Assembly: GCA_002269645.1 (NCBI GenBank)
Contig: NIVC01002976.1
Span: 62,001 to 126,000, forward strand
DNA from: Macrostomum lignano
Lineage: Eukaryota
DNA: 64,000 nt
Reading direction: 5' to 3'
The number at the start of each line of letters is the position of its first letter. The first letter of the stretch is position 1. Positions 641-56,636 of the stretch are shown here, piece by piece. The notes beneath the pieces were generated by a model. The model worked only from the letters and a program-made list of their open reading frames with translations. It was not told the origin of the DNA and searched no databases. Both the position numbers and the translations under genes were made by a program.

Positions 641-6712
<6,072 letters not shown>

Positions 6713-20483: not shown

Positions 20484-28158
<7,675 letters not shown>

Positions 28159-33084: not shown

Positions 33085-34640
33085 GCAGTTGACAAACTTT
33101 TTACCTCAAATGCCAAAGGAGAGGAGAGAAGGAGATAAGGGAGAGGAGACAAGGGAGAGGAGAGAAGGGAGAGGAGACAAGGGAGAGGAGAGAAGGGAGA
33201 GGAGACAAGGGAGAGGAGAGAAGGGAGAGGAGAGAAGGGAGAGGAGAGAAGGGAGAGGAGAGAAGGGAGAGCAGAGAAGGGAGAGGAGACAAGGGAGAGG
33301 AGAGAAGGGAGAGGAGAGAAGGGAGAGGAGAGAAGGGAGAGGAGAGAAGGGAGAGGAGAGAAGGGAGAGGAGAGAAGGGAGAGGAGAGAAGGGAGAGGAG
33401 AGAAGGGAGAGGAGAGAAGGGAGAGGAGAGAAGGGAGAGGAGAGAAGGGAGAGGAGAGAAGGGAGAGGAGAGAAGGGAGAGCAGATAAGGGAGAGGAGAC
33501 AAGGGAGAGGAGAGAAGAGAGAGGAGAGAAGGGAGAGGAGAGAAGGGAGAGTAGAGAAGGGAGAGGAGAGAAGGGAGAGCAGATAAGGGAGAGGAGACAA
33601 GGGAGAGGAGAGAAGGGAGAGGAGACAAGGGAGAGGAGAGAAGGGAGAGGAGAGAAGGGAGAGGAGAGAAGGGAGAGGAGAGAAAGGAGAGGAGAGAAGG
33701 GAGAGTAGAGAGGGAGAGGAGAGAAGGGAGAGCAGAGAAGGGAGAGGAAAGAAGGGAGAGGAGACAAGGGAGAGGAGAGAAGAGAGAGGAGAGAAGGGAG
33801 AGGAGAGAAGGGAGAGTAGAGAAGGGAGAGGAGAGAAGGGAGAGCAGATAAGGGAGAGGAGACAAGGGAGAGGAGAGAAGGGAGAGGAGACAAGGGAGAG
33901 GAGAGAAGGGAGAGGAGAGAAGGGAGAGGAGAGAAGGGAGAGGAGAGAAAGGAGAGGAGAGAAGGGAGAGTAGAGAGGGAGAGGAGAGAAGGGAGAGCAG
34001 AGAAGGGAGAGGAAAGAAGGGAGAGGAGAGAAGGGAGAGGAGAGAAGGGAGAGGAGAGAAGGGAGAGGAGACAAGGGAGAGGAGAGAAGGGAGAGGAGAG
34101 AAGGGAGAGGAGAGAAGGGAGAGGAGAGAAGGGAGAGGAGAGAAGGGAGAGGAGAGAAGAGAGAGGAGAGAAGGGAGAGCAGATAAGGGAGAGGAGACAA
34201 GGGAGAGGAGAGAAGAGAGAGGAGAGAAGGGAGAGGAGACAAGGGAGAGGAGACAAGGGAGAGGAGAGAAGGGAGAGTAGAGAAGGGAGAGGAGAGAAGG
34301 GAGAGCAGAGAAGGGAGAGGAAAGAAGGGAGAGTAGAGAAGGGAGAGGAGAGAAGGGAGAGGAGAGAAGGGAGAGGAGAGAAGGGAGAGGAGAGAAGGGA
34401 GAGGAGAGAAGGGAGAGGAGACAAGGGAGAGGAGAGAAGGGAGAGGAGAGAAGGGAGAGCAGAGAAGGGAGAGGAGACAAGGGAGAGGAGAGAAGGAAGA
34501 GGAGAGAAGAGAGAGGAGAGAAGGGAGAGGAGAGAAGAGACACAAACCGTATGCGGGCCGGATTGCTATAGTGAAGTTTTTAAGGACACCTGAGGGCCGG
34601 ATGGAAAGGCTTGACAAGCCGGAGTTTGCCAACCCCTGGT
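33085..34640. mobile_element. GA-rich hAT-like MITE with ~1.4 kb expanded 14-bp GGAGAGAAGGGAGA array
   Basis: Ends GTTGACAAACTTTTTACCTCAAATGCCA and GGAGTTTGCCAACCCCTG. The paralogous copy at ~45090-45310 has only ~95 bp of repeat. Confidence 0.65.
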
Positions 34641-34868
34641 TAATCATATTTTAATGATTTACGTGATTTAATGTTTTTCTTAAAATTCAGATTCAAGTTA
34701 ACATTCAGATGTTAACATTCAAGTTAAAGTTAACATTCAGATTCTGATTAAACAAAAACAATTCTGAAATCACAAGAATAAAATAAATTATAAATATTAA
34801 CATGCTAAAACATAAAACTTCAGTTTAATTGTCAGAGTTCAGACACAGAAGCCAGTTTTTTAAGCCGT

Positions 34869-37800
34869 TCAGTTGTCCGCTTCGTAGTACACAGTCTGGA
34901 AGAAAAACATTTGCTGGATGTACCTTTAACATTAGCGAAATTCCGTGAATGAAGTATTGAAGTTACAAAGAAGCTGCTCAACTCACGCTAGGGTCGTTCG
35001 GTTTCCCAGCGGCCTGCAGCTCGACACCATCTCTTCGACCGCTAGCGGCAGCTCGATTCCTCTTGAGCACAGCAGCAACAGTTGCCACGGCAACTACGGC
35101 AAGTGAGCAGCAGACTACAGCAACTGTCGAAGCCGGCGTGACAGTTAATGACCATCTATATACTGCAGCTTTTGCTGAAAGGAGAAATTGTGTTTTTGGG
35201 ATTTGGGATGGGATCAATCTCAAACCGACCCAGAAACTTACCGAAAGCATCCTGAAATGTTCTTTTTATCGTTAGAGCTGGGAATGGGTTGAGAGCATCT
35301 GAGTAAGGCTGGCTGAGCTGGCACGTGACCTCAACCTCAGACCGATGCTCGGAAAACCAATGAATGAGTCGCACTCTCCGAATCCAGCCCCGGTTGCTGT
35401 CTGTGCGATAGGGCTCAGGAATTACCTGTCAGTCAGAATGAATAAAAGTGAAGAGCATTAGAATCTGTGGGCCATGCAGAGTACGAGCTATCAATAAAAA
35501 ATTCAGAGTTCAAACCGTAAGTCTCTCGCCGTCTGATCTGCCGGAGTTCAGGGTGCACTTCAGAACCGGTTTTGGATTACCTTCGCCCGTTTCCACAGTC
35601 AGGTTGAGGTCGGACCCGTTCACCAACTGGCCTGACCAGCCGATCCAGTTCGATGGGACTGCGGGAGGATCAGACGTTTGAATCGGTAGTGCTTTGAAGT
35701 CTATGGGCATTAGATACTTGTAGATCAACTTCTATTCAAGTTAAGACCGCTCACAGATCACAGAAATATTCTTCCGGAAGACTCGGTCTTGCAGTCCATC
35801 TTGCTTGACTCTGCAGACTACATGGCCGCCGTTCATCCACTTTTCAACCTTCATGCCGAAGCTGGTCTCGAGCTGGTTCGCCTCCTTGGCTTGCTTTACA
35901 AAACTGTCCAAGCTCACTACGGGACCATCGCCTGTCTGCCGCCAGCACCGGTGACTGGGCTTCGGGTTGCCACCCAGGGACTTCACTGAGATCGAGAGGT
36001 GCTCGCCCTCTCTCAGTAGTTGCAGCCGAGTAGCAGTCCATTGAGTTTTTGCTTCATCTGAAAGAAATGAGCAGCCTTAATTGGCAGATGTGCAACCGAC
36101 AGCTCAGCCGCAGCTATTGCGCGGCGCATCTGAAGGCTGCGTACGGCTGCTCAGTCCAAGGACTGGGGGGGGGGGTCCGCCACACACACCCTCAATTACC
36201 CCAGCTAATGCTGGCACCCATTTTACAGCTGGGAGAACTGAAGCAATGCAGAGTTGAGCGTCTTGCTCAAGGACACAAACTGTTCGTCGTGGATCGGGAA
36301 TCGAACCCCCGACCCATCAGTCGTGAGTCCGACGCTCCAACCGCTAGGCTACAATCTCCTTTTTCTATATACTATGTACAAGCCCTAAAGTACTATGTCC
36401 TATTTAAAAGCTGAGCTTAATACAAATTCGGTAAGAGCTTTTAGCTACTCACATAGGACATTGAGCATCTCACTGCTCACTAGTAAATTAAAAACAGTGA
36501 AACCGTTCGGAGCAATTTGGACAATTTGACATTTGATCCGCATTCCATTGTCACTGGCAGCAGGTGTGAATCTCCAAGTCGATGAGTTGTTGTTGGAAGC
36601 TGGGGTCTAAAAGTTTTGATATATTGCATTACTTTTACGATTATCTGCTCCGATCATTCTGGTGCAATTTCTACGTACCGCTTGTTGAAGCGTCCTCTCA
36701 GCCAGGTGACAAAGGTGTCGAGCTGGTGGATTTCCCGAATCCGATGTCTGCAGGGTGAAACTCACAGCAGATCCGCTCAGAATTCGAGCTGAGGACAGTC
36801 TGATCGATGCGTTTCGGATCGCATCTGCGTGTGTTCAAATTTTTTTAACAGCTTATGATAATGTAGGCTTAAAACTTAAGATAAATGTGCAACTTACAGA
36901 ACACATCAAGAGTCGTGTTTATCCATTGCGCCAACTTGTCATCCTGCTCAAATGCACAGCTGAGAGTTTTTCTGTTGTACTTTCGTGTTATCGCATTCAG
37001 CATGAATTGCTTTTCAAACCGGTCCGGTGCTAGAGACGCATTAGATGGTGCAGTTTCCTGTCAATGGAGAAGTTTTCGTGAATAATGAGGTTACAATAAA
37101 CGAAAACATACTTTAATAACATCTGGGTAAAAGCAAACCTGAAGCAGGGTCCCTCCAGCCCAGCAGGTGACATTTCTCACGGGTGGTCTGCCACCAACTG
37201 ACACTGCTGTGATGGTTAAATTGTCGCCTTCAGTAATGAATGCACTGGGACTGAACGTCAGTGAGTTGTTGGCCAAGACTGAAAATTGGAATGAAGGTTT
37301 TAGAATTTTATGCTTAATGTCATCGATTGGTAATTTTTGCGGCCAATCTTTCTGTAGAAATTTTCTTTGTTATAAGGCTGATGAAAGAGGGTCAAATCCG
37401 GATCAATCACTTATCAGTAATCGATTACCAATGTCAATTACGCAAGTAGTTTAGATTACTAATAATAATGCAATATAATAATAAGAAGTGCAACCGACAG
37501 CTCAGCTGCAGCCATTGCGCGGCGCATCTGAAGGCTGCGTACGGCTGTCCAGTCCAAGGACTGGGGGGGGGGGGTCGCCACACACCCCCTAAGTTACCCC
37601 ATCTGGGTGAACTGAAGCAATGTAGAGTTTGCACAAGGACACAAATTGTTCCTAGTCGGTAGAGAATCGAACCCCCGACCTTTAAGTCGTAAGTCCGACG
37701 CTCTAACCACTAGGGTACAACCTCTCAAATTACAAAAGAAAAATTTGCGAAAGGCATATACTATGTATGATACTCATAGATATCGCAGGCTTAGAAATAA

Positions 37801-40800
37801 TACTTACATTAACCATAGCTTTAACATACAAGTAGGTTCGTATTTTGTCAGAATCAAAAAACTTACGAAAAAGTTCGACTCGGCCGCTGCTAAAAGTCTG
37901 ATTGAATAAAGTCGAACCATCTTTGGCAGTTTGAACGATTTTGCAGTAGACTTTCTGTCCAGAGTCATCGGTAGGGAAGTTCCACGTCCAGAGTGATGAC
38001 GCATTCCGACATGTCGAAGGCTGAAACCCGTTTTGGATGCTGAGAGCGAAAATAAGAAAGGTACAGCACTGTTAAAATGGTTTTCCCTACCTTTAAAAGA
38101 TTGAGAATCCTTCCAGAAGCAGAGCAGCTGTGCAGAGCCGGAGGATTTCCGCAGTCAGAGGCGAGCAGCAGAATTTCAGCTGAGGAATTCGCTCGGATCT
38201 GCGGTGCGGCCAGCCTGATGGAGGCGCTCCGCACGGGGTCTGTGGTAATTTAAGTTGCATATACAGTAAGGCTGCATATTGCTATCAATTGTTGCGTCCA
38301 GTATGGCTATGCATCGTTGCCTTGCAGAGATAGGAGACTACACTCTTAGGCGTACCTTACACTCATAATCATGAGTAATTAGCAGGTCAGCTCCGTGGCC
38401 TCTTACTCATACTTGTAGCAACTCTTTACTGTCTACTGCAGCATACCAGCGTATTAATTAGCATTAGATCTCATTGCGTCCTGCACCTCTAACTTTTACT
38501 TCACAAATATCACTATGTATGTACATAAATTAAATTTTAAACTTTAAAATTAAAATAAATCATGCTAATTTTTAATAGTGTAGTTTAAGGCGGTTTACAG
38601 CATCTAATTTGTTTCAAACTTTCTTCTGGCTGTCTTGGTGGTGATGGGTGAGCGTGTGAGCGGGTCTGCTGCTTAGCTTTTTCATGTGATCATTTTTAAA
38701 TCAAGTTTTGCTTTGCTTGAATCAGCGATTCGGCAAGCAAATATTCATGAAGTGACTCACACAGAGCAGCTGGTAGTGGATGCCGGGCCCAGGTCTCGAT
38801 CAGTCCCGACTGATTCACCAGACACGCAACGGATGCCCTGCTGCCCCACCGTCTGCTCACAGTTACTGAGAATGTGCTGCTCAAGTTTGTGCTCTGAAGT
38901 GAGTTCAGCCCATGCTGTTTTCTGCGGGTTTCGCAACTCAGCTGCAAAACTGTAAAATACTCACCGAGACAATCCGCAGTGTCGAGTTCGGGACTCCCTC
39001 TGACTGCAGAAAGCAGCTATGACTGGTTGTCGCCCAGTTCCCTTGAGATGAGTCGGCTGTCAGATTGACAGTCGCTCCGTCTATCCAGTTGGAGTCTGGC
39101 GGAAGCAGAAACCGAGTCCTGCAGGGCTCTGGAAAGGTTCGAGACGTTGGTGGGATGAGAATTGTTGTTGCGTGAATCAGCAGTGAGAGCTGACTCACCC
39201 TTTATTTCAGGTATGCGAGCTGACACTGTTGTTATGGTCTGATTGTTGCACTCGAGGCTGCAAAATAATGTTCCGCCCTGATAGCTCAGCGATACTGGAA
39301 CGCTGAAGTACGAGATGAGATCAAAGCTCGCATTGCTGCTCCTTGTGGTGAGTTTCTGAAATTCAAAATGCCAAATAATTATTCGGTTTAGCTTGTGAAA
39401 GATTGCTCCACGGTAAAGTGAAAGATTTAGTGTGTCTTTAAAAACGAGAACATGAAAGTTTCTTCTCACTTCCGAGATCGGCCTTAGTTCTTTAACATTA
39501 CTCATCGAATTGAATACAGAAATTGCCACCGAACACTTGTGCACAGGCATTGGAAACGAGCCTTGAGTGATGAATGTGAAAACTGCAGTACTGTTGACCA
39601 CCCAGTGCTTAGTGAAGCCAAGGTTCAGCTGAATGGACGATGGGATTTCTGGAATGTTTAGAGCTGTTGCACATACTCTGGAGCCAAGCAGCTAGCTACT
39701 TCCCCAAAAATTCCCCAGAACACAAACAGCTCGCTACTTCCCCAAAATTCCCCAGAACACAAACAGCTCGCTACTTCCCCAAAATAATTCCCCAGAACAC
39801 AAACAGCTCGCTACTTCCCCAAAAAGTCCCCAGAACACAAACAGCTCGCTACTTCCCCAAAATAATTCCCCCAGAACACAAACAGCTCGCTACTTCCCCA
39901 AAATAATTCCCCCAGAACACAAACAGCTCGCTACTTCCCCAAAAAATTCCCCAGAACACAAACAGCTCGCTACTTCCCCAACAAATCCCCAGAATAGAGT
40001 CAACGCCCCACATTCAGAACTCACTGATCGACTTCCAACCGCGGAGTCCCAACGTCTGTGAAGTCACCGCCAGAGTGCCATCAGTGCAGCTGTGCCGGCA
40101 CTGCAGTGACGCACCGTGCATATCCCAAGTCATGGTAATGTCGTTCAGAATCAGGAAGCTGGGTCTATAAGTCTTCTGTAAGATTGAAGGGAAACTTTAA
40201 TGTAATACTGTTTTACATCTTACACTGTAATTTGATTTCGATTCAGTCCTTACGATTCTCAGGGCCGTGACGTCACCGCTACGGGTTCTGATGCTGCAGT
40301 TCACCGAGTCAGGCTTCTCTGTCTTGCATGGCAGCGACTCTTTAACCATCACCTTGTCGTTTAGCGTCAGTTTTGACAATTGTTCAACAGAGCACCTTTG
40401 TCTGCCTTCTGGCTTGCAAAAGTATTCTCTAAAGCAGCCAGACTCCTGTGCTTCATCTTGTTCATCTTCCTCAAGTTCCACCATCACGAAGTTCATGTAC
40501 TTGTCGGCTGCATTGGCAACGAATTTCCTCAGCAACACGAACCTCGGCAGCTGCAATGGGATTCAAAAGTGAGCACAGCGAGTTCGAATATCGAATGGAT
40601 TCAGTAAGCGGGTGCCAAACCTTTGAATAATTCCGAGTTGCGCAGGTCATTTTGTATGAAAAGTTCGAGTTGCCAAAGTTTCCAGTGACTCCGCACAGGT
40701 AAAATTCGATCAGACTGTGGTTGAAACTCGCGATGCAGTCAAGTGGATTCTCAGTCAGACCTGCTGGCATCTGGTGGCCGAGCAGAACCTCGATGCCCTG

Positions 40801-41662
40801 GGCCCTGACTTTTTCTGAAACTTTAGCTATATAATCAGGTATTATGTAAACTGGCTGTTCATTTGAATATTTAGTTTAAACAGCCACTTGAAATTGACAA
40901 CTCACCGACATTCCTTCGGTGGACAATCACAGAGCGCACTGAAACACATCGAGCAAGTTTCACAAGCAGCCACTGGTAGCCAGAAGCATCTGGAGTGTTG
41001 CTGGAGTGAAAATAGTCCCATTGCCATGGTCTGGCTGATGAGTCACGGAAGCAGCCTTGTCTGTTGTATGCGGAAGATTGCCAGGCGTCAGAAATCTCCT
41101 TGGCTGTTATGTTGACGCCAACGCCTGCAGCATTGTTAGGTGAGTTGTGATGACCTTGGATTTCTTGATGGCGAAGTCGTTCTTCCCTATCGCTGCATAA
41201 TGGCCCCGAGAGTCTCTTCGATGTCAGTCTCGCCCTACCATGTCCCCGACTCGCCCTTTCATATCCTCGACTCGCCCTTCCATATCCTGACTCGCCCTTC
41301 CATATCCCCGACTCGCTCTTCCAAATCCCGGACTCGCCCTTCCATATCCCCGACTCGCTCTTCCACATCCCGACTCGCCCTTCCATAACCCTGACTCGCC
41401 CTTCCATATTCCCGACTCGCCCTTCCATATCCCCGACTCGCCCTTCCATATCCCCGACTCGCCCTTCCATATCCCCGACTCGCTCTTCCAAATCCCGGAC
41501 TCGCCCTTCCACATCCCGGCGTCACCCTTAAATATCTGTTGTGCTGGTCAATACGAAATTCTGGTCTCAAGTTAAGCAATCATATGTTGATAAGTACTCA
41601 CAGTATCCAACGCAGCACAAGGTGCATATGAAGAAAATTACCAGGTTCACAGAGAAATCCAT
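34869..41662 (-). CDS. Receptor 2: signal peptide + F-type-lectin/discoidin-like domain + 8 Ig-like domains + TM + tail TVYYEADN
   Basis: Checked exons: 41662-41602 (MDFSVNLVIFFICTLCCVGY), 41124-40906, 40814-40621, 40550-40254, 35174-34987 (TM VAVVCCSLAVVAVATVAAVL) and 34895-34869. The intervening Ig exons carry GGRPPVRNVTCW, GGNPKPSHRCW and GEGNPKPVLKC. Splice phases are consistent where checked. Confidence 0.82.
36084..36356 (-). mobile_element. CORE-like tRNA SINE (intronic)
   Basis: Reverse complement of the 21961-22230 element. Duplicate at 46709-46982. Confidence 0.8.
37488..37723 (-). mobile_element. CORE-like tRNA SINE (intronic)
   Basis: Same family, with a TTA-rich tail. Duplicate at 48121-48355. 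Confidence 0.8.
39692..39992. repeat. ~39-bp intronic minisatellite TTCCCCAGAACACAAACAGCTCGCTACTTCCCCAAAA
   Basis: About 7 tandem units. Confidence 0.9.
41229..41520. repeat. 21-bp minisatellite CCCGACTCGCCCTTCCATATC in intron 1 of receptor 2
   Basis: About 13 units, lying between exons 41602 and 41124. Confidence 0.88.
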
Positions 41663-42079
41663 TCTGACTTCTCGTTGTGTATCGGATTTTTTGCACTGGG
41701 TTTCTGCTATGTGGCTACGCTGTAATCGCTTCAGTCTCAAAAAACTTTTTTCAAAAAAATGGGACTTTGGAATGCTTTGAAAATACGGCAATACACTTTA
41801 CGATGCTGCGACGTAAATCGTTATTTTTCAGACATAGTTGTACGTGCTATTAATTAGTTTTTACAGTTTGGTTGAATTTTACTTGTCATGGAACTCTGCT
41901 TACTCTCACATTTGCGCAGCACTGTACGCTCTCACTTTTCATTGGTTAAACTTGAAAAAGATGTGTAAAATTCTGCCAATTGCTTTTTGCAGCGATGTTC
42001 AAGTATGACAAATTTGCCTCAACAGCTCAGAGACGAAGACAAAGACACCAGCAGATATAAGTTCGCACTCTTTTACTTT

Positions 42080-43990: not shown

Positions 43991-45493
43991 GATTCATACG
44001 GATCGCTCCGAGTTGAAGATATTTCTGGCTTTGTGTCTTTTATGCCATATTTAATTAACTGAATTCCTGTTTCGAATTAAAATCTATCCATACTCGTCAA
44101 AGTACTTGGAGTTTGACCGAAAGTATTCGACTGCATTGAAACAACATTTAGTAAGCTGTACCTGCTTTACAATGAATGTTTGTAGAATATAGGCTAAATT
44201 GGCTACTTTCAATGGCGTGTTTAGCGAATTATTGAAATTATTGAAAAAAATTTTGCTAGACTGTCGACAGAACTTGAAGTCGATAAACAAATACTCGAAT
44301 TCGCAAAGTAAAATGCAGATAGCAAGACTTCGCAAAGATGGAAAATTTTGATTTATAAAATATTAAAAAGGGCCTATTAGATATGTATATAGTTATGTAT
44401 TGCTACATCAATTTTCTTTTTAATTTCTCCTGACGATACTGAGTTCCTTATCATCATTGAACGATATGTTAGCTAATTTTATTATTAATAAACTTGAGGA
44501 TATGAAAGTTATTTTGAAAGTCATGTAGCCTATCGAAAGCTTACTTGACGTTTATATAACCGAACTTATCATTAAATTAGCATAATTAGATTATGCTGAC
44601 TATTCAAATACATTCAGTTGTCATATTTTGATGCAGATCAGGACTGATTTGGCAGGAAATAGCAGAACTTCGCAATATTAATCTAACGGAAGACCCAATT
44701 TTTATAAACAAAAACTTTCCCACCACAGCGAATAGTTGTTAGTTGGAAATACAAATGTTAAAATTCCGAGCTGTGGTTGGAAACTCTGTGGTTAAATAGA
44801 TCTGCTAACTTATCTTTAGCTGCCTTCGACGTGTATTGGAATTTACAAATTTATACTCCAAATAATAATTAAATTGTTGATTTTTCGTACATTTTGAATT
44901 ATATTATATTTGTAGTTTACCAATCAAAAAGCATATAGGATTCGCAAGGATCCAACACTTTTTAATACTCGTAGCTTCGCTTATAATAACTAAAGCTATT
45001 TAATCAGTTCATAATAACTAGACAGTTGCTGCAACACAGTAACTCTGAAAAGTAATGTTTTAATTAATTGGTTTAATGATTTACATTAGCAGTTGACAAA
45101 CTTTTTACCTCAAATGCCAAAGGAGAGGAGAGAAAGGAGAGGCGAGAAGGGAGAGGAGAGAAGGGAGAGGAGAGAAAGGAGAGGAGAGAAGAGAGAATAG
45201 AGCAGAGAAGAGACACAAACCTTATGCGGGCCGGATTGCTATTGTGAAGTTTTTAAGGACCCGAGGGCCGGATGGAAAGGCTTGACGAGCCGGAGTTAGC
45301 CAACCTCTGGTTAATCATATTTTAATGATTTACGTGATTTAATGTTTTTGCGTGCTAAACATTCAGATTCTGATTAAACAAAAACAATTCTGAAATCACA
45401 AGAATAAATAAAATATAAATATTAACATGCTAAAACAGAAGAGTTCAGTTTTTATTGTCAGAGTTTAGACACAGAAGCCAGTTTTTAAGCCAT

Positions 45494-48400
45494 TCAGTTG
45501 TCCGCTTCGTAGTACACAGTCTGTAAGAAAAACATTTGCTGGATGTACTTTTAGCATTAGCGAAATTCCGTGAATGAAGTATTGAAGTTACAAAGAAGCT
45601 GTTCAACTCACGCTAGGGTCGTTCGGTTTCCCAGCGGCCTGCAGCTCGACACCTCCTCCTCGACCGCTAGCGGCAGCTCGAGTCCTCTTGAGCACAGCAG
45701 CAACAGTTGCCACGGCAACTACGGCTAGTGAGCAGCAGAGTACAGCAACTGTCGAAGCCGGCGTGACAGTTATTGGCCATCTATATACTGCAGCTTTTGC
45801 TGAAAGGAGAAATTGTGTTTTTGGGATTTGGGATGGGATCAATCTCAAACCGACCCAGAAACTTACCGAAAGCATCCTGAAATGTTCTTTTTATCGTTAG
45901 AGCTGGGAATGGGTTGAGAACATCTGAGTAAGGCTGGCTGAGCTTGCAAGTGACCTCAACCTCAGTTTGCCGCTCGGAAAACCGATGAATGAGTCGCACT
46001 CTCCGAATCCAGCCCCGGTTGCTGTCTGTGCGATAGGGCTCAGGAATTACCTGTCAGTCAGAATGAATAAAAGTGAAGAGCATTAGAATCTGTGGGCCAT
46101 GCAGAGTACGAGCTATCAATAAAAAATGCAGAGTTCAAACCGTAAGTCTCTCGCCGTCTGATCTGCCGGAGTTCAGGGTGCACTTCAGAACAGGTTTTGG
46201 ATTACCTTCGCCCGTTTCCACAGTCAGGTTGAGGTCGGACCCGTTCACCAACTGGCCTGACCAGCTGATCCAGTTCGATGGGACTGCGGGAGGATCAGAC
46301 GTTTGAGTCGGTAGTGCTTAGAAGTCTAATGGCATTAGATACTTGTAGATCAACTTATATTCAAGTGAAGAGCGCTCACAGATCACAGAAATATTCTTCC
46401 GGAAAACTCGATCTTGCAGTCCATCTTGCTTGACTCTGCAGACTACATGGCCGCCGTTCATCCACTTTTCAACCTTCATGCCGAAGCTGGTCTCGAGCTG
46501 GTTCGCCTCTTTGACTTGCTTTACAAAACTGTCCAAGCTCACTACGAGACCATCGGCTGTCTGCCGCCAGCACCGGTGACTGGGCTTCGGGTTGCCACCC
46601 AGGGACTTCACGGAGACTGAGAGGTGCTCACCCTCTCTCAGTAGTTGCAGCCGAGTAGCAGTCCATTGAGTTTTTGCTTCATCTGAAAGAAATGAGCAGC
46701 CTTAATTGGCAGATGTGCAACCGACAGCTCAACCGCAGCTATTGCGCGGCGCATCTGAAGGCTGCGTACGGCTGTTCAGTCCAAGGACTGGGGGGGGGGT
46801 CCGCCACACACACCCTCAATTACCTCAGCTAATGCCGGCACCCATTTTACAGCTGGGTGAACTGAAGCAATGCAGAGTTAAGTGTCTTGCTCAAAGACAA
46901 AAATTTTTTCTAGTGGATCGAGGATCGAACCCCCGACCTTACAGTCGTGAGTCCGACGCTCCAAACGCTAGGCTACAACCCCATTTGACTTTATACTGTG
47001 TACACCCCTAAAGAAGTACTATAGACATGTTCCGTTTAATAGTTAAACTCAATAAAAATTCGGAAAACAAAATTTAAAAACTCACACAGCACATTGAGCG
47101 TCTCACTGCTCACTAGTAAATTAAAAACAGTGAAACCGTTCGGAGCGATTTGGACAATTTGACATTTGATCCGCATTCCATTGTCACTGGCAGCAGGTGT
47201 GAATCTCCAAGTCGATGAGTTGTTGTTGGAAGCTGGGATCTAAAAGTTTTGATTTATTGCATTACTTTTACGATTATCTGCTCCGATCATTCTGTTACAA
47301 TTTCGACGTACCGCTTGTTGAAGCGTCCTCTCAGCCAGGTGACAAAAGTGTCGAGCTGGTGGATTTCCTGAATCCGATGTCTGCAGGGTGAAACTCACAG
47401 CAGATCCGCTCAGAATTCGAGCTGAGGATAAACTGATCGATGCGTTTCGGATCGCATCTGCGAGGGTTCAAAATTATTTTAACAGCTTATGATAATGTAG
47501 GCTTAAAACTTAAGATAAATGTGCAACTTACAGAACACATCAAGAGTCTTGTTTATCCACTGCGCCAACTTGTCATCCTGCTCAAATGCACAGCTGAGAG
47601 TCCTTCTATTGTACTTGCGTGTTATCGCATTCAGCATGAATTGCTTTTCAAACCGGTCCGGTGCTAGAGACGCATTAGATGGTGCAGTTTCCTACCATTG
47701 GAGAAGTTTTCGTGAATAATGAGGTTACAGTAAACCAAAACATACTTTAATAACAGCTGGGTAAAGGCAAACCTGAAGCAGGGTTCCTCCAGCCCAGCAG
47801 GTGACATTTCTCACGGGTGGTTTGCCACCGACTGACACCGCTGTGATGGTTAAATTGTCGCCTTCAGTAATGAATGCACTGGGACTGAGAGTCAGTGAGT
47901 TGTTGGCTAAGACTGAAAATTGGAATGAAGGTCTCAGAATTTTATGCTTAATGTCATCGATTGGTAATTTTTGCGGCCAATATTTCTGTAGAAATTTTCT
48001 TTGTTATAAGGCTGATGAAAGAGGGTCAAATCCGGATCAATCACTTATCAGTAATCGATTACCAATGTCAATTACGCGAGTAGTTTAGATTACTAATAAT
48101 AATGCAATATAATAATAAGAAGTGCAACCGACAGCTCAGCTGCAGCCATTGCGCGGCGCATCTGAAGGCTGCTTACGGCTGTCCAGTCCAAGGACTGGGG
48201 GGGGGGTCGCCACACACACCCTCAGTTACCCCATCTGGGTGAACTGAAGCAATGCAGAGTTTGCACAAGGACACAAATTGTTCCTAGTCGGTAGAGAATC
48301 GAACCCCCAACCTTTCAGTCGTGATTCCGACGCTCTAACCACTAGGATATAACCTCCTCTCAAATTACAAAAGAAAAATTTGCGAAAGGCTTATACTATG

Positions 48401-51400
48401 TATGATACTCATAGATATCGCAGGCTTAGAAATAATACTTACATTAACCATAGATTTAACATACAAGTAGATCGTCTTTTGCCAAAATCAAAAAAACTTA
48501 CGAAAAAGTTCGACTCGGCCGCTGCTAAAAGTCTGATTGAATAAAGTCGAACCATCTTTGGCAGTTTGAACGATTTTGCAGTAGACTTTCTGTCCAGAGT
48601 CATCGGTAGGGAAGTTCCACGTCCAGAGTGATGACGCATTCCGACATGTCGAAGGCTGAAACCCGTTTTGGATGCTGAGAGCGAAAATAAGAAAGGTACA
48701 GCACTGTTAAAATGGTTTTCCCTACCTTTAAAAGATTGAGAATCCTTCCAGAAGCAGAGCAGCTGTGCAGAGCCGGAGGATTACCGCAGTCAGAGACGAG
48801 CAGCAGAATTTCAGCTGGAGAATTCGCTCGGGTCTGCGGTGCGGCCAGCCTGATGGAGGCACTCCGCACTGGGTCTGCAAGGTTTTTAAATATTTTTCAC
48901 TCCAATTCCATTGCCCTGTTTTTGAGACATTTATCCCACTCAACTTCCGCCTGAAGAAACTCATTGCCAATGTACTCGTAGTTTTTACGCGTATATTTTT
49001 ACTACTTGCAATTAGCACTAGAATTCGGCATTCTTCAATTAAATTTTTGATAGTCATTGTGTGAAAAATTCAACTTTATCCTTACAAAAAACGGTGATGT
49101 TTTGCCGAAAATTGCTGCTCAAATTTTCGAGGCCGGTCTGAGAGACGCTGCACGCCACTGAGCCGCCGTCCATCCGCCTTGTGGAGTTCGCGCTGAAGTT
49201 GGTGCTCTTCGCTCTGCTGCCTGTCTGATCCGACTGAGTTCCATCAGTGCTGCTCATGCTTATATTCCCACCCTGAGCTGTCCGCAGCCAGCACCGGTGA
49301 CTGGGCTCAGGGTTGCCACCGACTGACCGAACTGAGACTGACACGGGCTCGCCCTCCTTCATCACCAGAGGCTGAGTTGCATTCCATGAGTTCCTTGACG
49401 CATCTGTTGTACAAATCAATTCATTTGAATAGCGTTCCATTCACTCAGAATCATAACAATGGGAAACAAAAACGACTCAAACTCACAGAGCACATCGAGT
49501 TTGTCACTGACTACTGACTTGCGAAACAAAACTGTGCTGCTTTCAGTCATCTGCAAAAGATCACACTGGATTTGCTGTCCGTTGTCTCCGGCCAGAGCGT
49601 TCAGTGTCCATAGAGATGTAGCATTTGATGCAGATTGAGGCTGGAATCAGTTTAGGGAACGAGGTTATTGTCATGTATCACCTGTCAGTCAAATACTACA
49701 AACTACAGCCTTACCATAATCTGTGTGAGATTCCTTCCGGAAGCAGAGCAGCTGTGCAGAGCCGGAGGATTGCCGCGGTCAGAGGCGAGCAGCAGAATTT
49801 GAGCTGGGGAATTCGCTCGGATCTGCGGTGCGGCCAGCCTGATGGAGGCGCTCCGCACGGGGTCTGCGGTGTTTGCATATGCAGTTGGCTATTATGTACA
49901 AATTGTGTACCAACTGAAAAAACTATATATGTGAAGCCACATGCTGTTGCAAATAATGATAGTCAGCTATCCATCACGTGACTCACACAGAGCAGCTGGC
50001 AGCGGATGCCGGGCCCAGGTCTCGATCAGTCCCGACTGATTCACCAGACACGCAACGGATGCGCTGCTGCCCCACCGTCTGCTCACAGTTACTGAGAATG
50101 TGCTGCTCGAGTTTGTGCTCTGGAATGAGTTCATTTCACACCATGCTTTCTGCAGGTCTCGGCGGCAAAACTGTAAAATACTCACCGAGACAATCCGCAG
50201 TGTCGAGTTCGGGACTCCCTCCGACACCAGAAAGCAGCTATGACTGGTTGTCACCCAGTTTCCTTGAGATGAGTCAGCTGTCAGATTGACAGTCGCTCCA
50301 TCTATCCAGCTGGAGTCTGGGGGAAGCAGAAACCGAGTGCTGCAGGCCTCTGAAACGGTTCGAGTCGGAAGTGCTAAGGCGATTGCTGCGGTGAGAGCCA
50401 GCAGTGAGAACTCACCGAGTAGCTTAGGCAGGCGCAGTGTTACTGGTGCTATATTTGTGCTGTCACTGCATTTTATGCTGCAAGATATGTTTCCATTCTT
50501 ATATTCTGATTGCAGTTTCACCTCAAAGTACGACTTTGCACCGATACTTCTAGTACTGAACTTCTGTGTTTCACTCTAAAAGCATGCATGAAAGTTCACA
50601 AAAAATGTGAATGCGCATGATATTGAGTCGAAAATACAGCGCTTTTATTCTTACACTGAAAGTCGAATTCAGTCTTTTTATTGAGATCGTTTTCGACTTT
50701 TTTCGTCTTGATGTACTGCCATAATTTCTCGGATCATATGTAAGATAGCAGTCGTACTCTGTTGCAGAAACCAAGCCATCCGTGCTGAGAGAGAACACTG
50801 CTGTCCTGTTCACCACCCAGTGCTTGGTGATGCTCAGATCAAGACTTGGAGCTCCTGAAATTCAAGCTGAAAGCTTAGAAAAAGAAAAAAGAAATGGTGA
50901 CTTCAATTTCACGTTAAAGTTGGTGAATGACCAACTGGAAATGAGAAGGATTGATGATACAGTTCTACATAATCGGCAGTTCATTTATTGAAAGATACAG
51001 CGCGAGAAAAACATGAGATACTGAAATTTATTTACTCAATCACAGCTTCACCGAAATTGCCATTAAGTAATGTTACAATGGCGAAGCAGGTGTTTGGAAA
51101 CCGTCTCAAAACTCTTTCAAGCTCACCCTTTGCTACACATTGGTTTATCATCAGTTCTTGCGAAGTCTGCGCGAGACTTCCGTCAGTGCAGCTCTGTCGG
51201 CACTGCAGATTCGCTTCGTGAAATTCCGGTGTCACGTTAATCTCTTTCAAAATGAGGAAACTGGAAGTTTTTGCCTTCTGCAAAATTTATCGGATTCAAG
51301 TTGTAAGTTAGTAGCTAATGAATTTCAGCATTTTGTTTCCAGTTCAGCTCTCACACTGCTCAGAGCCATGACGTCACCGCTTCGCATCCGGATGCTGCAG

Positions 51401-51947
51401 TTGACTGCACCAGGTGCGGATGATGAGCTGCACGGAAGCCATGCCTTAACCATCAGTTTATCATTTTCCTTCAGTGTTAACAATTCTCTCTCAAAACATC
51501 CAACGCTGCTTTGTTTGCAAAAGTACGCTCCGTAGCAGTGAGCATTTTTGGCGTCTCGATCAGAATCATTGCTTCTTTTAATAGCCAAGCTATTTTCCTC
51601 GATCTGCAGCAGCCGGAAGTTCATGTACTTGTCAGCATTGTTGTGCACAAACTTCCTCAGCAGCACAAACTGCGGCAACTGTAATGAGATGTCAATGAGG
51701 ACATTAAAACATGCACGGGAGCTCCAATATTGAAGGACTCAGCAATTGCATACCTTTGAATAGTCTCGAACTGAGCAGGTAACTTTATATGCTAATTCTG
51801 AGTTAGTTGAGTTCTCGGTGATTCCACACAGGTGAAATTCGGTCAGGCTGTGGTTGAAACCCGCTATGCAACCTGGCGGATTCTCAGTCAGACCAGCTGG
51901 CCTCTCGTGGCTGAGCAGCACCTCGATGCCCAGGGCTCTAACTCTTT
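45494..51947 (-). CDS. Receptor 3 (paralogue of receptor 2): second half of the lectin-like domain + 10 Ig-like domains + TM + tail TVYYEADN; 5' exons not found in the window
   Basis: Exon-by-exon homology with 34869-40814. First visible exon starts at 51947 (ERVRALGIEVLL). Last exon is 45520-45494. Extra Ig exons lie at ~49080-49860. Confidence 0.8.
46709..46982 (-). mobile_element. CORE-like tRNA SINE (duplicate of 36084-36356)
   Basis: Same position relative to the flanking exon and same motifs. Confidence 0.8.
48121..48355 (-). mobile_element. CORE-like tRNA SINE (duplicate of 37488-37723)
   Basis: Same position and motifs. Confidence 0.8.
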
Positions 51948-52013
51948 CTGGGACTGGGGCTGGTTTGATAATGTGCAAGGAAAACTGTGAACTGATTATT
52001 ATCAAACATTCTT

Positions 52014-52734
52014 ATGCACAAAAACACAGTGTGCACAAACACACGGTGTGCACAAACACACGGTGTGCACAAACACACGGTGTGCACAAACACACGGTGT
52101 GCACAAACACGCGGTGTGCAAAAACACACGGTGTGCACAAACACACGGTGTGCACAAACACACGGTGTGCACAAACACACGGTGTGCACAAACACACAGT
52201 ATGCACAAACACACGGTATGCACAAACACACAGTATGCACAAACACACAGTATGCACAAACACACGGTGTGCACAAACACACGGTGTGCACAAACACACG
52301 GTGTGCACAAACACACAGTATGCACAAACACACGGTGTGCACAAACACACGGTGTGCACAAACACACGGTGTGCACAAACACACGGTGTGCACAAACACA
52401 CGGTGTGCACAAACACACGGTGTGCACAAACACACGGTGTGCACAAACACACGGTGTGCACAAACACACGGTATGCACAAACACACGGTATGCACAAACA
52501 CACGGTATGCACAAACACACGGTGTGCACAAACACACGGTATGCACAAACACACGGTATGCACAAACACGCGGTGTGCACAAACACACGGTGTGCACAAA
52601 CACACGGTGTGCACAAACACACGGTATGCACAAACACACGGTATGCACAAACACACGGTATGCACAAACACACGGTGTGCACAAACACACGGTATGCACA
52701 AACACACGGTATGCACAAACACGCGGTGTGCACA
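52014..52734. repeat. 17-bp satellite GCACAAACACACGGT(G/A)T, left of the retrotransposon
   Basis: Tandem array, interrupted at 52735. Confidence 0.98.
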
Positions 52735-52924
52735 AATGGCTAGTTTGCGCGGGCTGCGCTAACTGGCGTTTGTGTACGCTGCCCACCCCTGCCCCTCCCC
52801 GCGGCTTCCCCCCACCCCCGGTGTTGGGGGGGGGGGGTTGCGTGGCGGGGGTTTTATACCCCGCGGTTGGCTCTTTGGCCTCGCTGTCGCATTGCAATTG
52901 AAAAAATTTTTATGCTGCTGAGTC

Positions 52925-53956
52925 ATGTCACACGATTCTCTGACGGTACGAGAACTGCGCATGGCCTTGCGTGCTAAAGGCTTGCAAACCGTAGGCAACA
53001 AGCGCACCCTATTGGAGAGACTTCTGCAGTCTCAAGGCTCAGTGGACACGGGACCCATCGATGAATCGGACACCAGCAATCCATCGAGAAGGCGAGGGCC
53101 CGACGACGGGACGGCGGCGGTCGGCGGCGGCGAGGCGGCAGGAGGGACCCACGGGACTGGCGACCTGGACCGGGACCTGCGGGAGGCAGAGAAGCAGCTG
53201 CGCTTGCTGACAATTCGTCGGGACCAAGCGCGCCTGGAAGCCGAGATCCGTCAGCTGGACCGCCGTGCCGATGAGCCGCAGCGGCGACCTGCAAATGCCT
53301 CAGTGCCCGGTGAGTACTCAAGCCTTGAGGATTTAGTGCTGGGACCTACTGTCAGAGTGCCGGATGAGGTGCAGCAGGCGGGGCAGCAGCACCCGAATGC
53401 GTACCGGGTGCCGGAGTTCATCAGCGCTCGCAAGCGGCTGGCGCTGAACAAGTCAAGTCAAGCCAGCAAGCAGGCCGCCCTGGACAGCCTCTCGGTTGGC
53501 GACTGGATCACCGGAAACGCCAACGCGCTGATGCAGATGTTGAAGGACGGCAGACTCCTCGTCCTCCGTGATGGCGCTATCGACATGTCGGAGCTGCTGG
53601 AGTACCTGAAGCACACGGCAAAAATTGGCGACCTCCTTGATCTCGGATTCGACCGCGGCCGCGTTTTGCGCTATGATGATGAGTACAGAGCGCAGCACGC
53701 TGAGGCCGGCGCCTGGGACAGCTCGGTGACCGACCTGGGTCTGGTGGCGGCACACCTGATGGCTCCGAATCTTCAACTGCAGGCCGGCTCAGCGGGCAGG
53801 TCATCAGCAAAGCGACCGGTCTGCTTCGACTTCAACAAGGTGTCCGGCTGCCAGCGCAACCCGTGTCGTTTCGCACACAGTTGTAGGCGCTGCGGCCAGG
53901 CGCACTCGGAGGCCTCCTTCCACAGAGCGGAGGGCGGCCAGGCGGCAAAAAACTGA
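52925..53956 (+). CDS. ORF1 Gag-like protein: N-terminal SAP-like domain, coiled coil, C-terminal Cys/His knuckle
   Basis: LTVRELRMALRAKGLQTVGNKRTLLERL is SAP-like. CFDFNKVSGCQRNPCRFAHSCRRCGQAH is the Cys/His cluster. Confidence 0.88.
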   Translation: MSHDSLTVRELRMALRAKGLQTVGNKRTLLERLLQSQGSVDTGPIDESDTSNPSRRRGPDDGTAAVGGGEAAGGTHGTGDLDRDLREAEKQLRLLTIRRDQARLEAEIRQLDRRADEPQRRPANASVPGEYSSLEDLVLGPTVRVPDEVQQAGQQHPNAYRVPEFISARKRLALNKSSQASKQAALDSLSVGDWITGNANALMQMLKDGRLLVLRDGAIDMSELLEYLKHTAKIGDLLDLGFDRGRVLRYDDEYRAQHAEAGAWDSSVTDLGLVAAHLMAPNLQLQAGSAGRSSAKRPVCFDFNKVSGCQRNPCRFAHSCRRCGQAHSEASFHRAEGGQAAKN

Positions 53957-54044
53957 TGGACGGGGTTCAGCGGCAGGGGTCTCTTAACATCGAGTCGCCC
54001 GCCCCTGCCGCTGCTTCTGTCGAACCCCAAAAGGAGGGCGACTC
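53947..54044 (+). promoter_or_regulatory. Putative -1 programmed ribosomal frameshift signal (A AAA AAC + 8-nt spacer + pseudoknot)
   Basis: Heptamer at 53947-53953 is in the gag frame just before TGA. Complementary segments: 53962-67/54023-28, 53968-79/54002-13 and 53992-54000/54036-44. Confidence 0.72.
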
Positions 54045-55929: not shown

Positions 55930-56636
55930 CCAGGCACCCGCTGCTGCACCTGGTTCTGCGGGGAGCCAAGCGCGAGCTGGGGTCGGAGCCGAGTCGCAAG
56001 CTGCCGGTGTCGCCAGACCTTTTGTCGAGACTGCGGCTGCAAGTCGACAGCTCGAATCCTGTGCAGGCGGCCTGCTGGGCTGCGGTCATGTGCGCTTGGT
56101 GGGGGATGTTCAGGAAGTCCAGCCTGCTGCCGCGAGGGCGCGCCGATCCGCCAGTGCTGCGACTGAGCTCGCTGGCAAGATGCCCCGAAGGCCTGCTTCT
56201 GACGTCCAGCTTCGGGAAGACCAACCAGTACGGCCGGACGCATCGCGTGCTGCTGCCAGAGTTGACTTCGGGCCACCCGCTCTGTCCAGTGGCGGCACTG
56301 CGAGGCCACCTGCGCTGCAACCGGCTGAAGCGGCGGCAGCAGGGCCTGTTTTCATTCAGCAGTGGATCGTCCGGTCACGCATCTCTGACGTCCCGGAGGC
56401 TCGATGTACAGTTCAGGTCGTGGCTCGGCAAGGCGGGAGTTCCGGCGGCCGGGTTTTCTGTGCATAGCCTGCGGCGAGGCGCCGCCACCTGGGCGGCCCG
56501 GTGCGGCCTGTCAGTGCGGGAGATCCAGTGCGTGGGTGACTGGCGCAGCGATGCAGTGAGCGTCTACCTGTCCCGCGATGACACGGCTCTGCGTGCGGCG
56601 CGCAAGCTTGCTGTTGCGGCGCTTGACCAAACCTGA
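55660..56636 (+). CDS. ORF3 tyrosine recombinase (frame open from 55629; no upstream ATG; probably entered by splicing at 55660)
   Basis: Catalytic set present: FRKS (R), GKTNQ (K), HSLRR (HxxR), GDW (W) and VYL (Y). An N-terminal core-binding region YASSSKRSLSSAVRTWQRFC lies upstream of the listed GTG start. Confidence 0.92.

What the first reader, a model, noticed from the sequence alone, without database searches (positions are those of the whole stretch)
34869..41662. Clustered receptor family with unusual architecture: F-type-lectin-like head on an 8-10 Ig stalk and a tiny Tyr tail
Seen after splicing: signal peptide, then ...AWQSSAY...FHSS...YQWLLVKLARCVSVRSVIVHRRNVEKVRAQGIEV..., then Ig-like domains, TM and ...TVYYEADN*. 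Established: F-type lectins carry an A-x-QSS motif, W-W-x-V-D-L and H-x26-R-x-D-x4-R. Here the spliced sequence gives H-x29-R-x-N-x4-R, and the final R appears only across the exon junction. Three paralogues plus a fragment lie within ~32 kb. Inference: an expanded glycan-recognition, immune or allorecognition-type receptor family in an invertebrate.
Basis: partly seen in the sequence, partly recalled or inferred. Interest (0 to 1): 0.72.

Follow-up and report, generated by a model that had tools for sequence, protein, structure and literature searches.

The report
Flatworm receptor with cryptic lectin-like head
The region encodes an intact 1130-residue cell-surface protein of the flatworm Macrostomum lignano. 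Its tip is a very diverged relative of the fucose-binding F-type lectin domain, carried on eight immunoglobulin-like domains, and the family is found only in this genus and has so far been labelled only as hypothetical Ig-like proteins.

Summary
A 20-exon, all-GT-AG gene on the minus strand (41662..34869) encodes signal peptide, head of about 165 aa, eight Ig-like domains, TM segment and a 34-aa tail ending TVYYEADN. A UniProt prediction from M. lignano (A0A1I8HXW3) is 100% identical over 452 aligned residues, so the window is M. lignano.

The F-type-lectin reading is largely supported. A profile of the family heads finds only F-type lectins as credible matches among PDB sequences (FBP32 E 3.5e-8, eel agglutinin 0.035, Sm-hPAF lectin domain 0.05). 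An AlphaFold model (pLDDT 73, pTM 0.76) matches only galactose-binding-type jelly rolls.

It is not a canonical fucose lectin:
- The two Arg of the triad align, and the second is invariant.
- Asp is Asn, and the Cys-Cys pair and the calcium motif are missing.

The cluster claim needs correcting. Only this gene has a whole head. Paralogue B lacks the first half within the window and carries a nonsense codon. Paralogue C has no detectable head. No separate fragment was found.

A search of 1.84 billion proteins found 14 hits; two look like repeat artefacts, and the other 12 are M. lignano entries or near-identical to them. One paralogue has ITIM- and ITSM-like tail motifs.

The parts
41602..41662 (-). 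Gene A exon 1: ATG and signal-peptide-like segment MDFSVNLVIFFICTLCCVGY(C), GT donor, phase 1
   Evidence: Paralogues P0006, P0008 and P0022 also have a hydrophobic N-terminus directly before the WQSS motif.
40906..41124 (-). Gene A exon 2: first half of the head. It holds AWQSS, YFHSSNTPDASGYQWLLVKL and VIVHRRNV, including the first Arg of the pair.
   Evidence: Head-profile hit E 1e-30. It aligns with ATQSS...PWWRVDL...NR of F-type lectins.
40621..40814 (-). Gene A exon 3: middle of the head. It holds EKV-R-A (the family-invariant Arg), GIEVLLG, PAGL and conserved Cys residues.
   Evidence: The intron position is shared with P0008.
40254..40550 (-). Gene A exon 4: the last two head strands (LPRFVLLRKFV ... 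YMNFVMVELEE), an acidic and Cys-rich linker, and the first half of atypical domain D1
   Evidence: The AlphaFold model has strands at head residues 141-147 and 158-165.
40025..40175 (-). Gene A exon 5: second half of D1. Its Ig-like nature was not tested.
   Evidence: The junction is confirmed by P0001 and P0015.
38761..39648 (-). Gene A exons 6-9 (39648-39470, 39355-39199, 39128-38965, 38941-38761): Ig-like domains D2 and D3, two exons each
   Evidence: The profile of stalk repeats hits only Ig-fold chains in PDB.
36453..38239 (-). Gene A exons 10-15 (38239-38091, 38020-37867, 37278-37139, 37057-36898, 36824-36679, 36606-36453): Ig-like domains D4, D5 and D6, two exons each
   Evidence: Pfam C2-set_2 matches residues 778-813 at 23.5 bits against a cutoff of 21.
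35242..36057 (-). Gene A exons 16-18 (36057-35755, 35700-35516, 35425-35242): Ig-like domain D7 in a single exon and D8 in two exons
34869..35174 (-). Gene A exons 19-20 (35174-34987, 34895-34869): TM segment STVAVVCCSLAVVAVATVAAVL and the 34-aa tail KRNR...PSTVYYEADN with the stop codon
   Evidence: The TVYY motif is shared with paralogue P0010 (TVYYYEENP).
45494..51947 (-). Paralogue B. Exons 3-20 have the same layout as gene A, with two extra Ig domains at 49888-49057. Exons 1-2 are absent from the window and there is a TAA nonsense codon at 46320-46318. It is a probable pseudogene or truncated copy.
21321..28030 (+). Paralogue C. It has about 9 Ig-like domains and a TM exon (27889-28030), is about 40% identical to A, and has no detectable head. 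Its 5' and 3' ends are unresolved.

Best explanation
Gene A is an intact gene of Macrostomum lignano for a type I membrane glycoprotein.

**Shown: architecture**
- A cleavable-looking signal peptide.
- A membrane-distal jelly-roll head of about 165 aa that descends from the F-type lectin domain.
- Eight Ig-like domains, with 26 N-glycosylation sequons across the ectodomain.
- One TM helix.
- A 34-residue cytoplasmic tail ending TVYYEADN.

**Shown: state of the sugar site**
- The head keeps the F-lectin core strands and both arginines of the sugar-binding triad.
- It has lost the canonical His position, the Asp, the Cys-Cys pair and the calcium loop.
- In their place it has its own conserved features (W-x-Y-F-H, T-P-D-x-S-G-Y-Q-W, LLRKxV, DKxMNF).

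**Inferred: how it works**
- It is a cell-surface recognition or adhesion receptor.
- The Ig stalk holds the head far from the membrane.
- The head binds a ligand in trans, through the remodelled former sugar site. The ligand may be a glycan other than canonical fucose, or a protein.
- The signal is passed on through phosphorylation of the conserved tail tyrosines.

The family is confined to Macrostomum, and its members differ in tail type. One has ITIM-like plus ITSM-like motifs.
For: **Gene model**
- 20 exons, all GT-AG, one ORF.
- 100% identity to UniProt A0A1I8HXW3 over 452 residues.
- A paralogue from NCBI's annotation of the Mlig assembly, PAA49974.1 (P0008), shows the same signal-head-Ig-TM-tail layout and the same head intron position.

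**Head**
- The family profile A5 against 177,635 PDB sequences gives FBP32 at E 3.5e-8, with both of its F-lectin domains aligned. The eel agglutinin 1k12 scores 0.035 and the Sm-hPAF F-lectin domain 0.05-0.08. The only other hits are a coiled-coil protein (the earlier profile gave 1.1e-5).
- WQSS, QWLLVKL, the Arg pair and GIEV align in register with ATQSS, PWWRVDL, R-G-D-C-C-x-E-R and GAEI.
- The AlphaFold model has pLDDT 73.3 and pTM 0.76.
- All 50 listed Foldseek PDB hits are galactose-binding-type jelly rolls. They include 1k12 (E 4.2e-4, TM 0.50) and 3cqo.
- Two family members give sub-threshold Pfam hits to F5_F8_type_C_2 and F5_F8_type_C.

**Stalk**
- Pfam C2-set_2 matches in 5 of 11 members.
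- The repeat profile hits only Ig-fold chains: lambda constant domains, nectin-4, CD276, CD4 and SYG-2.

**Tail**
- TVYY is shared between gene A and P0010, which are about 36% identical overall.
- P0008 carries VVYAQV and TEYTEI 27 residues apart.

**Distribution**
- 14 hits among 1.84 billion representative proteins. Twelve look genuine: the nine whose source was looked up are M. lignano entries, and the other three are near-identical to those.
Against:
- Single-sequence Pfam and PDB searches of the head find nothing. Homology rests on an 8-10 sequence profile from one species.
- Foldseek alone does not separate F-lectins from CBM32, APC10, muskelin or SUN domains, and TM scores are only 0.4-0.5.
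- The canonical fucose and calcium motifs are not kept. The family His is Leu or Gln in some members. Lectin activity therefore cannot be assumed.
- The gene A tail matches neither the ITIM nor the ITSM consensus.
- D1 was not shown to be Ig-like.
Confidence: 0.7

Rival explanations
1. It is a true fucose- or glycan-binding pattern-recognition receptor. The head would still be a working lectin that uses the retained Arg pair plus the family His or Asp. The family would serve innate immunity or allorecognition, with short-tail and ITIM/ITSM-tail members acting as paired receptors.
For: - Both Arg of the triad align, and the second is invariant in all members.
- The head is the most diverged part between A and B: 70-78% nucleotide identity against about 95% in the 3' half.
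- P0008 has ITIM- and ITSM-like motifs with typical spacing.
- The FTL reviews tie F-lectins to self/non-self recognition (PMC5712786).
Against: - The His52 position is Pro, Asp81 is Asn or absent, and the calcium motif and Cys-Cys pair are absent.
- The review notes that such deviations, as in Drosophila CG9095/furrowed, may mean altered specificity or loss of sugar binding.
- The A-to-B identity gradient can equally come from gene conversion of the 3' half.
- Two of the three local copies are defective or headless.
- There are no expression or polymorphism data.
Confidence: 0.2
2. It is a cell-adhesion molecule in which the former lectin domain is a protein-protein module. It would act homophilically or heterophilically, as proposed for Drosophila Furrowed or seen in Ig-CAMs. 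It might work in tissue organisation, in the nervous system, or in gamete or mating recognition in this hermaphrodite.
For: - A long Ig stalk with nectin/SYG-2-type C2-set domains.
- A non-canonical sugar site.
- Furrowed is a TM protein with a non-canonical F-lectin domain and a role in cell adhesion.
- F-lectin repeats act in gamete recognition in oyster bindin (PMC5712786).
Against: - Nothing here tests adhesion.
- Restriction to one genus and variable tails are less typical of core adhesion molecules.
Confidence: 0.3
3. The locus is a decaying, non-functional duplicate in a repeat-rich polyploid genome, and the apparent architecture has no current function.
For: - Neighbour B has a nonsense codon and lacks its 5' exons in the window. 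C is headless.
- The region is full of satellites, SINE-like repeats and a retroelement.
Against: - Gene A keeps an uninterrupted 3393-nt ORF across 20 exons with all splice sites canonical.
- dN/dS between A and B over exons 10-20 is about 0.3.
- Head motifs and intron positions are conserved with paralogues only 38% identical.
Confidence: 0.07

Closest known systems
F-type lectin domain (fucolectins: eel agglutinin AAA 1k12, striped bass FBP32 3cqo, Streptococcus mitis Sm-hPAF lectin domain)
   Same: - These are the only credible sequence-profile matches in PDB (E 3.5e-8, 0.035 and 0.05).
- The jelly-roll fold is the same.
- The A/T-Q-S-S start, the W-W/L-x-V-x-L strand, the R...R segment followed by G-x-E-V and the closing hydrophobic strands align in register.
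   Different: - The fucose-binding His position is Pro.
- Asp is Asn or absent.
- There is no vicinal Cys-Cys and no h2DGx calcium motif.
- The head falls below the Pfam thresholds.
- It occurs as a single domain at the tip of an Ig stalk on a membrane protein, not as a soluble single or tandem lectin.
Drosophila Furrowed / CG9095 (F-lectin domain with C-type lectin domain, CCP repeats and TM)
   Same: It is a type I membrane protein with a non-canonical F-lectin domain held on a long stalk of repeated small domains. [quoted passage not shown]
   Different: - The stalk here is made of Ig-like domains, not CCP repeats.
- There is no C-type lectin domain.
- No sequence relationship outside the head was found.
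Lectin-Ig chimeric recognition proteins of invertebrates (snail FREPs: IgSF plus fibrinogen domain; amphioxus VCBPs: V-Ig plus chitin-binding domain). Comparison from my own knowledge, not tested here.
   Same: They combine Ig-superfamily domains with a carbohydrate-recognition-type domain in lineage-specific, multi-copy families.
   Different: - Those proteins are secreted and use other lectin folds.
- This one is membrane-anchored, with a tyrosine-motif tail and an F-lectin-derived head.
Nectin / nephrin (SYG-2) / B7-type C2-set Ig receptors
   Same: - The stalk repeats match Pfam C2-set_2.
- In PDB they match nectin-4 D2, CD276, SYG-2 and CD4.
- They have the G-G-N-P-x-P motif.
   Different: - The usual B-strand Cys is missing.
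- The invariant Cys pair sits after the GNPxP segment and in the V-x-C-x-V-x-Q strand. Assigning these to the C and F strands, a CD4-D2-like arrangement, is my reading and is not verified structurally.
- E-values are marginal (2e-3 to 0.02).

Membership tests
F-type lectin (FTL) family | F-type jelly-roll fold | tested here: met
   The AlphaFold model (pLDDT 73, pTM 0.76) matches only galactose-binding-type jelly rolls. These include AAA 1k12 (E 4.2e-4, TM 0.50) and FBP32. The fold search alone does not single out the F-type.
F-type lectin (FTL) family | Significant sequence similarity to known F-lectin domains | tested here: met
   The family profile against PDB sequences gives FBP32 at E 3.5e-8 with both domains aligned, AAA at 0.035 and Sm-hPAF at 0.05. 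Single sequences find nothing. Pfam F5_F8_type_C_2 reaches only E 0.009 in 2 of 11 members, below the cutoff.
F-type lectin (FTL) family | Fucose-binding motif H-x24-R-x-D-x4-(R/K), as written in PMC5712786.
   R-x-N-x4-R is present in gene A, and the last Arg is invariant in the family. In all three profile alignments the lectin His falls on Pro or Asp of T-P-D. The family His lies 4-5 residues upstream and is Leu or Gln in some members. Asp is replaced by Asn.
F-type lectin (FTL) family | Calcium-binding motif h2DGx | tested here: not met
   AIDGN of the lectins aligns with 'ARPWQ' in gene A and with unconserved residues in the family.
F-type lectin (FTL) family | Binding of L-fucose or fucosylated glycans | not testable with these tools
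   This needs recombinant protein and a glycan array.
Immunoglobulin superfamily, C2-set (CD80-like C2-set_2) | Repeated domains of about 100 aa that match Ig profiles | tested here: met
   PF08205 scores 23.5 bits against a cutoff of 21 in gene A and matches 5 of 11 members. All of the top 60 PDB hits of the repeat profile are Ig-fold chains, at E 2e-3 to 0.2. No structure prediction was run for the stalk.
Immunoglobulin superfamily, C2-set (CD80-like C2-set_2) | Canonical B-strand to F-strand disulfide | tested here: not met
   The aligned repeats have two invariant Cys, one after GNPxP..H and one in V-x-C-x-V-x-Q. There is no Cys in the B-strand position.
ITIM/ITSM-bearing inhibitory receptors | Cytoplasmic (S/I/V/L)xYxx(I/V/L) and TxYxx(V/I) motifs | tested here: not met
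   The gene A tail (…PSTVYYEADN) matches neither pattern. Paralogue P0008 matches both, with VVYAQV and TEYTEI.

The most novel reading that the evidence does not exclude
The family may be a flatworm-specific immune-type or self/non-self receptor system. It would consist of membrane receptors with a diversifying F-lectin-derived head on an Ig stalk. Some members would have ITIM/ITSM inhibitory tails and others short TVYY tails. That would be an independent invention of paired lectin-Ig receptors outside deuterostomes and molluscs.
Probability: 0.18. Interest if true: 0.75.

Novelty: new variant of a known kind. Interest (0 to 1): 0.45.

Why it matters
- **Unlisted architecture.** The two F-lectin reviews read here list C-type lectin, pentraxin, CCP, FA58C and TM partners for animal F-type lectin domains. 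They do not list an Ig-stalk membrane receptor (PMC5712786, PMC12221842).
- **A hidden head.** Standard annotation misses this one. Pfam finds nothing above its cutoffs, and UniProt calls the proteins 'Ig-like domain-containing' or hypothetical. This shows how far the domain can drift while keeping its core and its Arg pair.
- **A testable model.** If the head still binds a ligand, the family gives Macrostomum lignano, an RNAi-tractable flatworm, a testable candidate for cell-surface recognition. The candidate roles are immunity, adhesion or reproduction.
- **A signalling hook.** The ITIM/ITSM-like tail in one paralogue links the family to phosphotyrosine signalling.
- **Scale.** The find is modest: one lineage-specific family with no functional data.

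Tried and rejected
- Pfam on unspliced ORF pieces and on the spliced head gave no relevant hit.
- phmmer of the single head sequence against PDB gave no hit.
- The first AlphaFold run, with a 5-sequence alignment, was poor (pLDDT 60.6). I replaced it with a 10-sequence run.
- I looked for a fourth 'fragment', for exon 2 of paralogue B and for any head in paralogue C, using profile and phmmer searches of all six frames. None was found.
- P0012 (an NLR-type leucine-rich repeat protein) and P0014 (a bacterial protein with repeated carbohydrate-binding modules) appeared in the exhaustive search. I set them aside as multi-repeat artefacts.
- The CDK5RAP2 coiled-coil hits in PDB were rejected as compositional.
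- Literature searches for an F-type lectin in Macrostomum, and for the gene identifiers Mlig012130 and Mlig034318, found nothing.
- Rfam found no RNA family in the window.
Full report
**1. What is in the sequence**

The window is eukaryotic and repeat-rich.

Reading the DNA at each boundary, I joined 20 exons. All have AG acceptors and GT donors with consistent phases.

The protein reads, in order:
- a signal-like MDFSVNLVIFFICTLCCVGYC;
- a head of about 165 residues;
- an acidic, Cys-rich linker;
- eight domains of about 100 residues, most of them split over two exons;
- a hydrophobic segment STVAVVCCSLAVVAVATVAAVL followed by KRNR;
- a 34-residue tail ending TVYYEADN.

The ectodomain has 26 N-x-S/T sequons.

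**2. Organism and independent support for the splicing**

The head finds only Macrostomum lignano proteins among 5.8 billion. A cluster mate, UniProt A0A1I8HXW3 (P0015, 'Ig-like domain-containing protein', 490 aa, a fragment), is 100% identical to my model over all 452 aligned residues. It differs only by reading through the in-frame 114-nt intron 6.

So the window is M. lignano, and this locus already carries an automatic, partial prediction. Junctions 2/3, 3/4, 4/5, 5/6 and 7/8 are confirmed by that entry. The 6/7 splice is supported by paralogue P0002.

The paralogue P0008 (NCBI PAA49974.1, BOX15_Mlig012130g1) has the same signal-head-Ig-TM-tail plan. In its genomic locus L001, its intron between '…ARPGEL' and 'KRRAVGTEV…' lies at the same place as the gene A exon 2/3 junction.

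**3. The head**

Single-sequence searches find nothing, either in Pfam or in PDB sequences.

An exhaustive HMMER profile search of 1.84 billion representative proteins returned 14 hits. Twelve look genuine. Nine of these are named as M. lignano entries by their sources, and the other three are near-identical to them. The remaining two are repeat artefacts.

With a profile of 8-10 heads the picture becomes specific. Against the 177,635 distinct PDB sequences:
- the best hit is the striped-bass F-type lectin FBP32, at E 1.1e-5 and then 3.5e-8 with a cleaner alignment, with both of its lectin domains aligned;
- next are the eel agglutinin 1k12 (0.035) and the F-lectin domain of Sm-hPAF (0.05-0.08);
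- the only other hits are a coiled-coil protein.

The alignments are in register:

| Family | F-type lectin |
|---|---|
| WQSS | ATQSS |
| Q-W-L-L-V-K-L | P-W-W-R-V-D-L |
| R…R-A-x-G-I-E-V | R-G-D-C-C-x-E-R-L-x-G-A-E-I |

Two members also give sub-threshold Pfam hits to F5_F8_type_C_2 and F5_F8_type_C.

AlphaFold with the 10-sequence alignment gives pLDDT 73.3 and pTM 0.76, with about nine strands. The earlier 5-sequence run gave 60.6. In both Foldseek searches of PDB every listed hit is a galactose-binding-type jelly roll. The hits include a Bacteroides CBM, CBM32, APC10, the muskelin discoidin domain, SUN, XRCC1-N, the GnT-IVa lectin domain, 1k12 at rank 11-12 and 3cqo. TM scores are only 0.4-0.58.

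Fold evidence therefore gives the superfamily, and sequence-profile evidence gives the F-type family.

**4. The sugar site**

The review of the family defines the fucose motif as His, then R-x-D-x4-(R/K), plus a calcium motif h2DGx (PMC5712786). Gene A compares as follows:
- It has R-R-N-V-E-K-V-R, the same length as R-G-D-C-C-G-E-R. The last Arg is invariant in every family member and the first is present in most.
- In all three profile alignments the lectin His (C-T-H-S/T) falls on Pro or Asp of the family's conserved T-P-D.
- The family's own His (W-x-Y-F-H) lies 4-5 residues upstream, opposite 'F-Y-H-G' of the eel lectin. It is Leu or Gln in some paralogues.
- Asp is Asn, the vicinal Cys pair is gone, and AIDGN aligns with ARPWQ.

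This is a remodelled, non-canonical F-lectin domain, comparable in that respect to Drosophila CG9095/furrowed. I could not inspect model coordinates, so I cannot say whether the family His or Asp reaches the Arg pair in space.

**5. The stalk and tail**

Pfam C2-set_2 passes its cutoff in gene A (23.5 against 21 bits) and matches 5 of 11 members. A profile of 11 individual repeats hits only Ig-fold chains in PDB, at marginal E-values: lambda constant domains, nectin-4 D2, CD276, CD4 and SYG-2.

The repeats share G-(G)-N-P-x-P…H-x-C and V-x-C-x-V-x-Q. These two Cys are the only invariant ones, and the usual B-strand Cys is absent. This looks like a C-to-F strand disulfide of the kind known in CD4 domain 2. 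That comparison is my own knowledge and is not verified here. D1 is atypical and was not tested.

The tail motif TVYY recurs in the distant paralogue P0010 (TVYYYEENP…). P0008 has a long tail with VVYAQV (ITIM pattern) and TEYTEI (ITSM pattern) 27 residues apart. The gene A tail fits neither pattern.

**6. The cluster**

Three related genes lie between 21.3 and 52.0 kb.

*Paralogue B (minus strand, 45494-51947)*
- It is about 95% identical to A in nucleotides through exons 10-20, introns included. Identity is 92-93% in exons 8-9 and only 70-78% in exons 3-5.
- It has head exons 3 and 4 with an intact acceptor. About 60 bp upstream a 17-bp satellite begins. The satellite is interrupted by a retroelement and resumes to the end of the window. 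Exons 1-2 are not in the window.
- It also has AAA changed to TAA at 46320-46318 in exon 17.
- dN/dS against A over exons 10-20 is about 0.31.

*Paralogue C (plus strand, about 21321-28030)*
- It is about 40% identical to A.
- Its first recognisable exon starts exactly at the head/D1 boundary.
- No head sequence is detectable anywhere upstream.

No additional fragment was found. The 'expanded cluster' is therefore one intact head-bearing gene, one probably dead copy and one headless copy.

**7. What it most likely does**

Shown:
- an intact gene for a heavily glycosylated type I membrane protein;
- an F-lectin-derived head at the tip of an Ig stalk;
- a conserved Tyr motif in a short tail;
- a family confined to Macrostomum.

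Inferred:
- it is a recognition or adhesion receptor whose head binds a ligand in trans;
- the tail tyrosines couple that binding to signalling.

Whether the ligand is a glycan is open, since the site is remodelled. An immune or allorecognition role, a homophilic adhesion role like Furrowed and a reproductive role are all compatible with the data. None is tested.

**8. Comparison and novelty**

The closest relatives by sequence are the F-type lectins. The closest by architecture is Furrowed (F-lectin domain plus stalk plus TM). The closest by concept are invertebrate lectin-Ig chimeras such as FREPs and VCBPs.

The two F-lectin reviews read here list CTLD, pentraxin, CCP, FA58C and TM partners but no Ig stalk. 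I did not read the primary survey by Bishnoi et al. 2015. I found no paper on this family.

I rate it a new variant of a known kind, of moderate interest.

Noticed in passing
window 46318-46320 (minus strand, paralogue B exon 17): An in-frame TAA sits where gene A has AAA (Lys). The exon is otherwise 98% identical. Together with the missing 5' exons, this makes B a likely pseudogene or a truncated, possibly secreted, form.
   Followed up: yes
window 34800-41800 versus 45425-52000: Nucleotide identity between paralogues A and B falls from about 95% (exons 10-20 and their introns) to 92-93% (exons 8-9) and then 70-78% (exons 3-5). This suggests recent gene conversion of the 3' half, or faster divergence of the head end.
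   Followed up: partly
window 52925-56636 (+): Three ORFs of a retrotransposon of the tyrosine-recombinase (DIRS-like) type: a SAP-domain protein, reverse transcriptase with RNase H, and a phage-integrase-type recombinase. The element is inserted in a 17-bp satellite just upstream of paralogue B.
   Followed up: partly
window 52015-52736 and 57230-64000: The same 17-bp satellite (TGCACAAACACACGGTG) is present on both sides of the retroelement. It runs for at least 6.8 kb to the end of the window, and it hides or replaces the 5' end of paralogue B.
   Followed up: partly
window 21771-21843 (+), with repeat copies at 21965-22230, 36085-36354, 37484-37724, 46711-46980 and 48118-48358: ARAGORN calls a tRNA-Arg(ACG) here. 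It lies beside and within a SINE-like repeat of about 270 bp whose copies sit in introns 11 and 15 of gene A and in paralogues B and C. It is probably the tRNA-derived head of the SINE rather than a working tRNA gene.
   Followed up: no
window 26380-26818, 2802-4666, 33117-34537, 41229-41517 and 39685-39994: Large simple repeats and minisatellites: (TAC)146 in an intron of paralogue C, (ATCT)467, a 14-bp array of 102 copies between the genes, and 21-bp and 41-bp arrays in introns 1 and 5 of gene A. Several create long spurious ORFs.
   Followed up: no
gene A protein domains D2-D8 (window 35242-39648): The Ig-like repeats lack the usual B-strand cysteine. They have an invariant Cys pair placed after G-N-P-x-P..H and in V-x-C-x-V-x-Q, which suggests a same-sheet C-to-F disulfide.
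   Followed up: partly
L001 4223-15969 (M. lignano NIVC01003746.1), protein P0008: This distant paralogue has a cytoplasmic tail of about 120 residues with VVYAQV (ITIM pattern) and TEYTEI (ITSM pattern) 27 residues apart. Its neighbouring gene is a poly(A)-binding-protein-like gene, so this copy is not in a cluster.
   Followed up: partly
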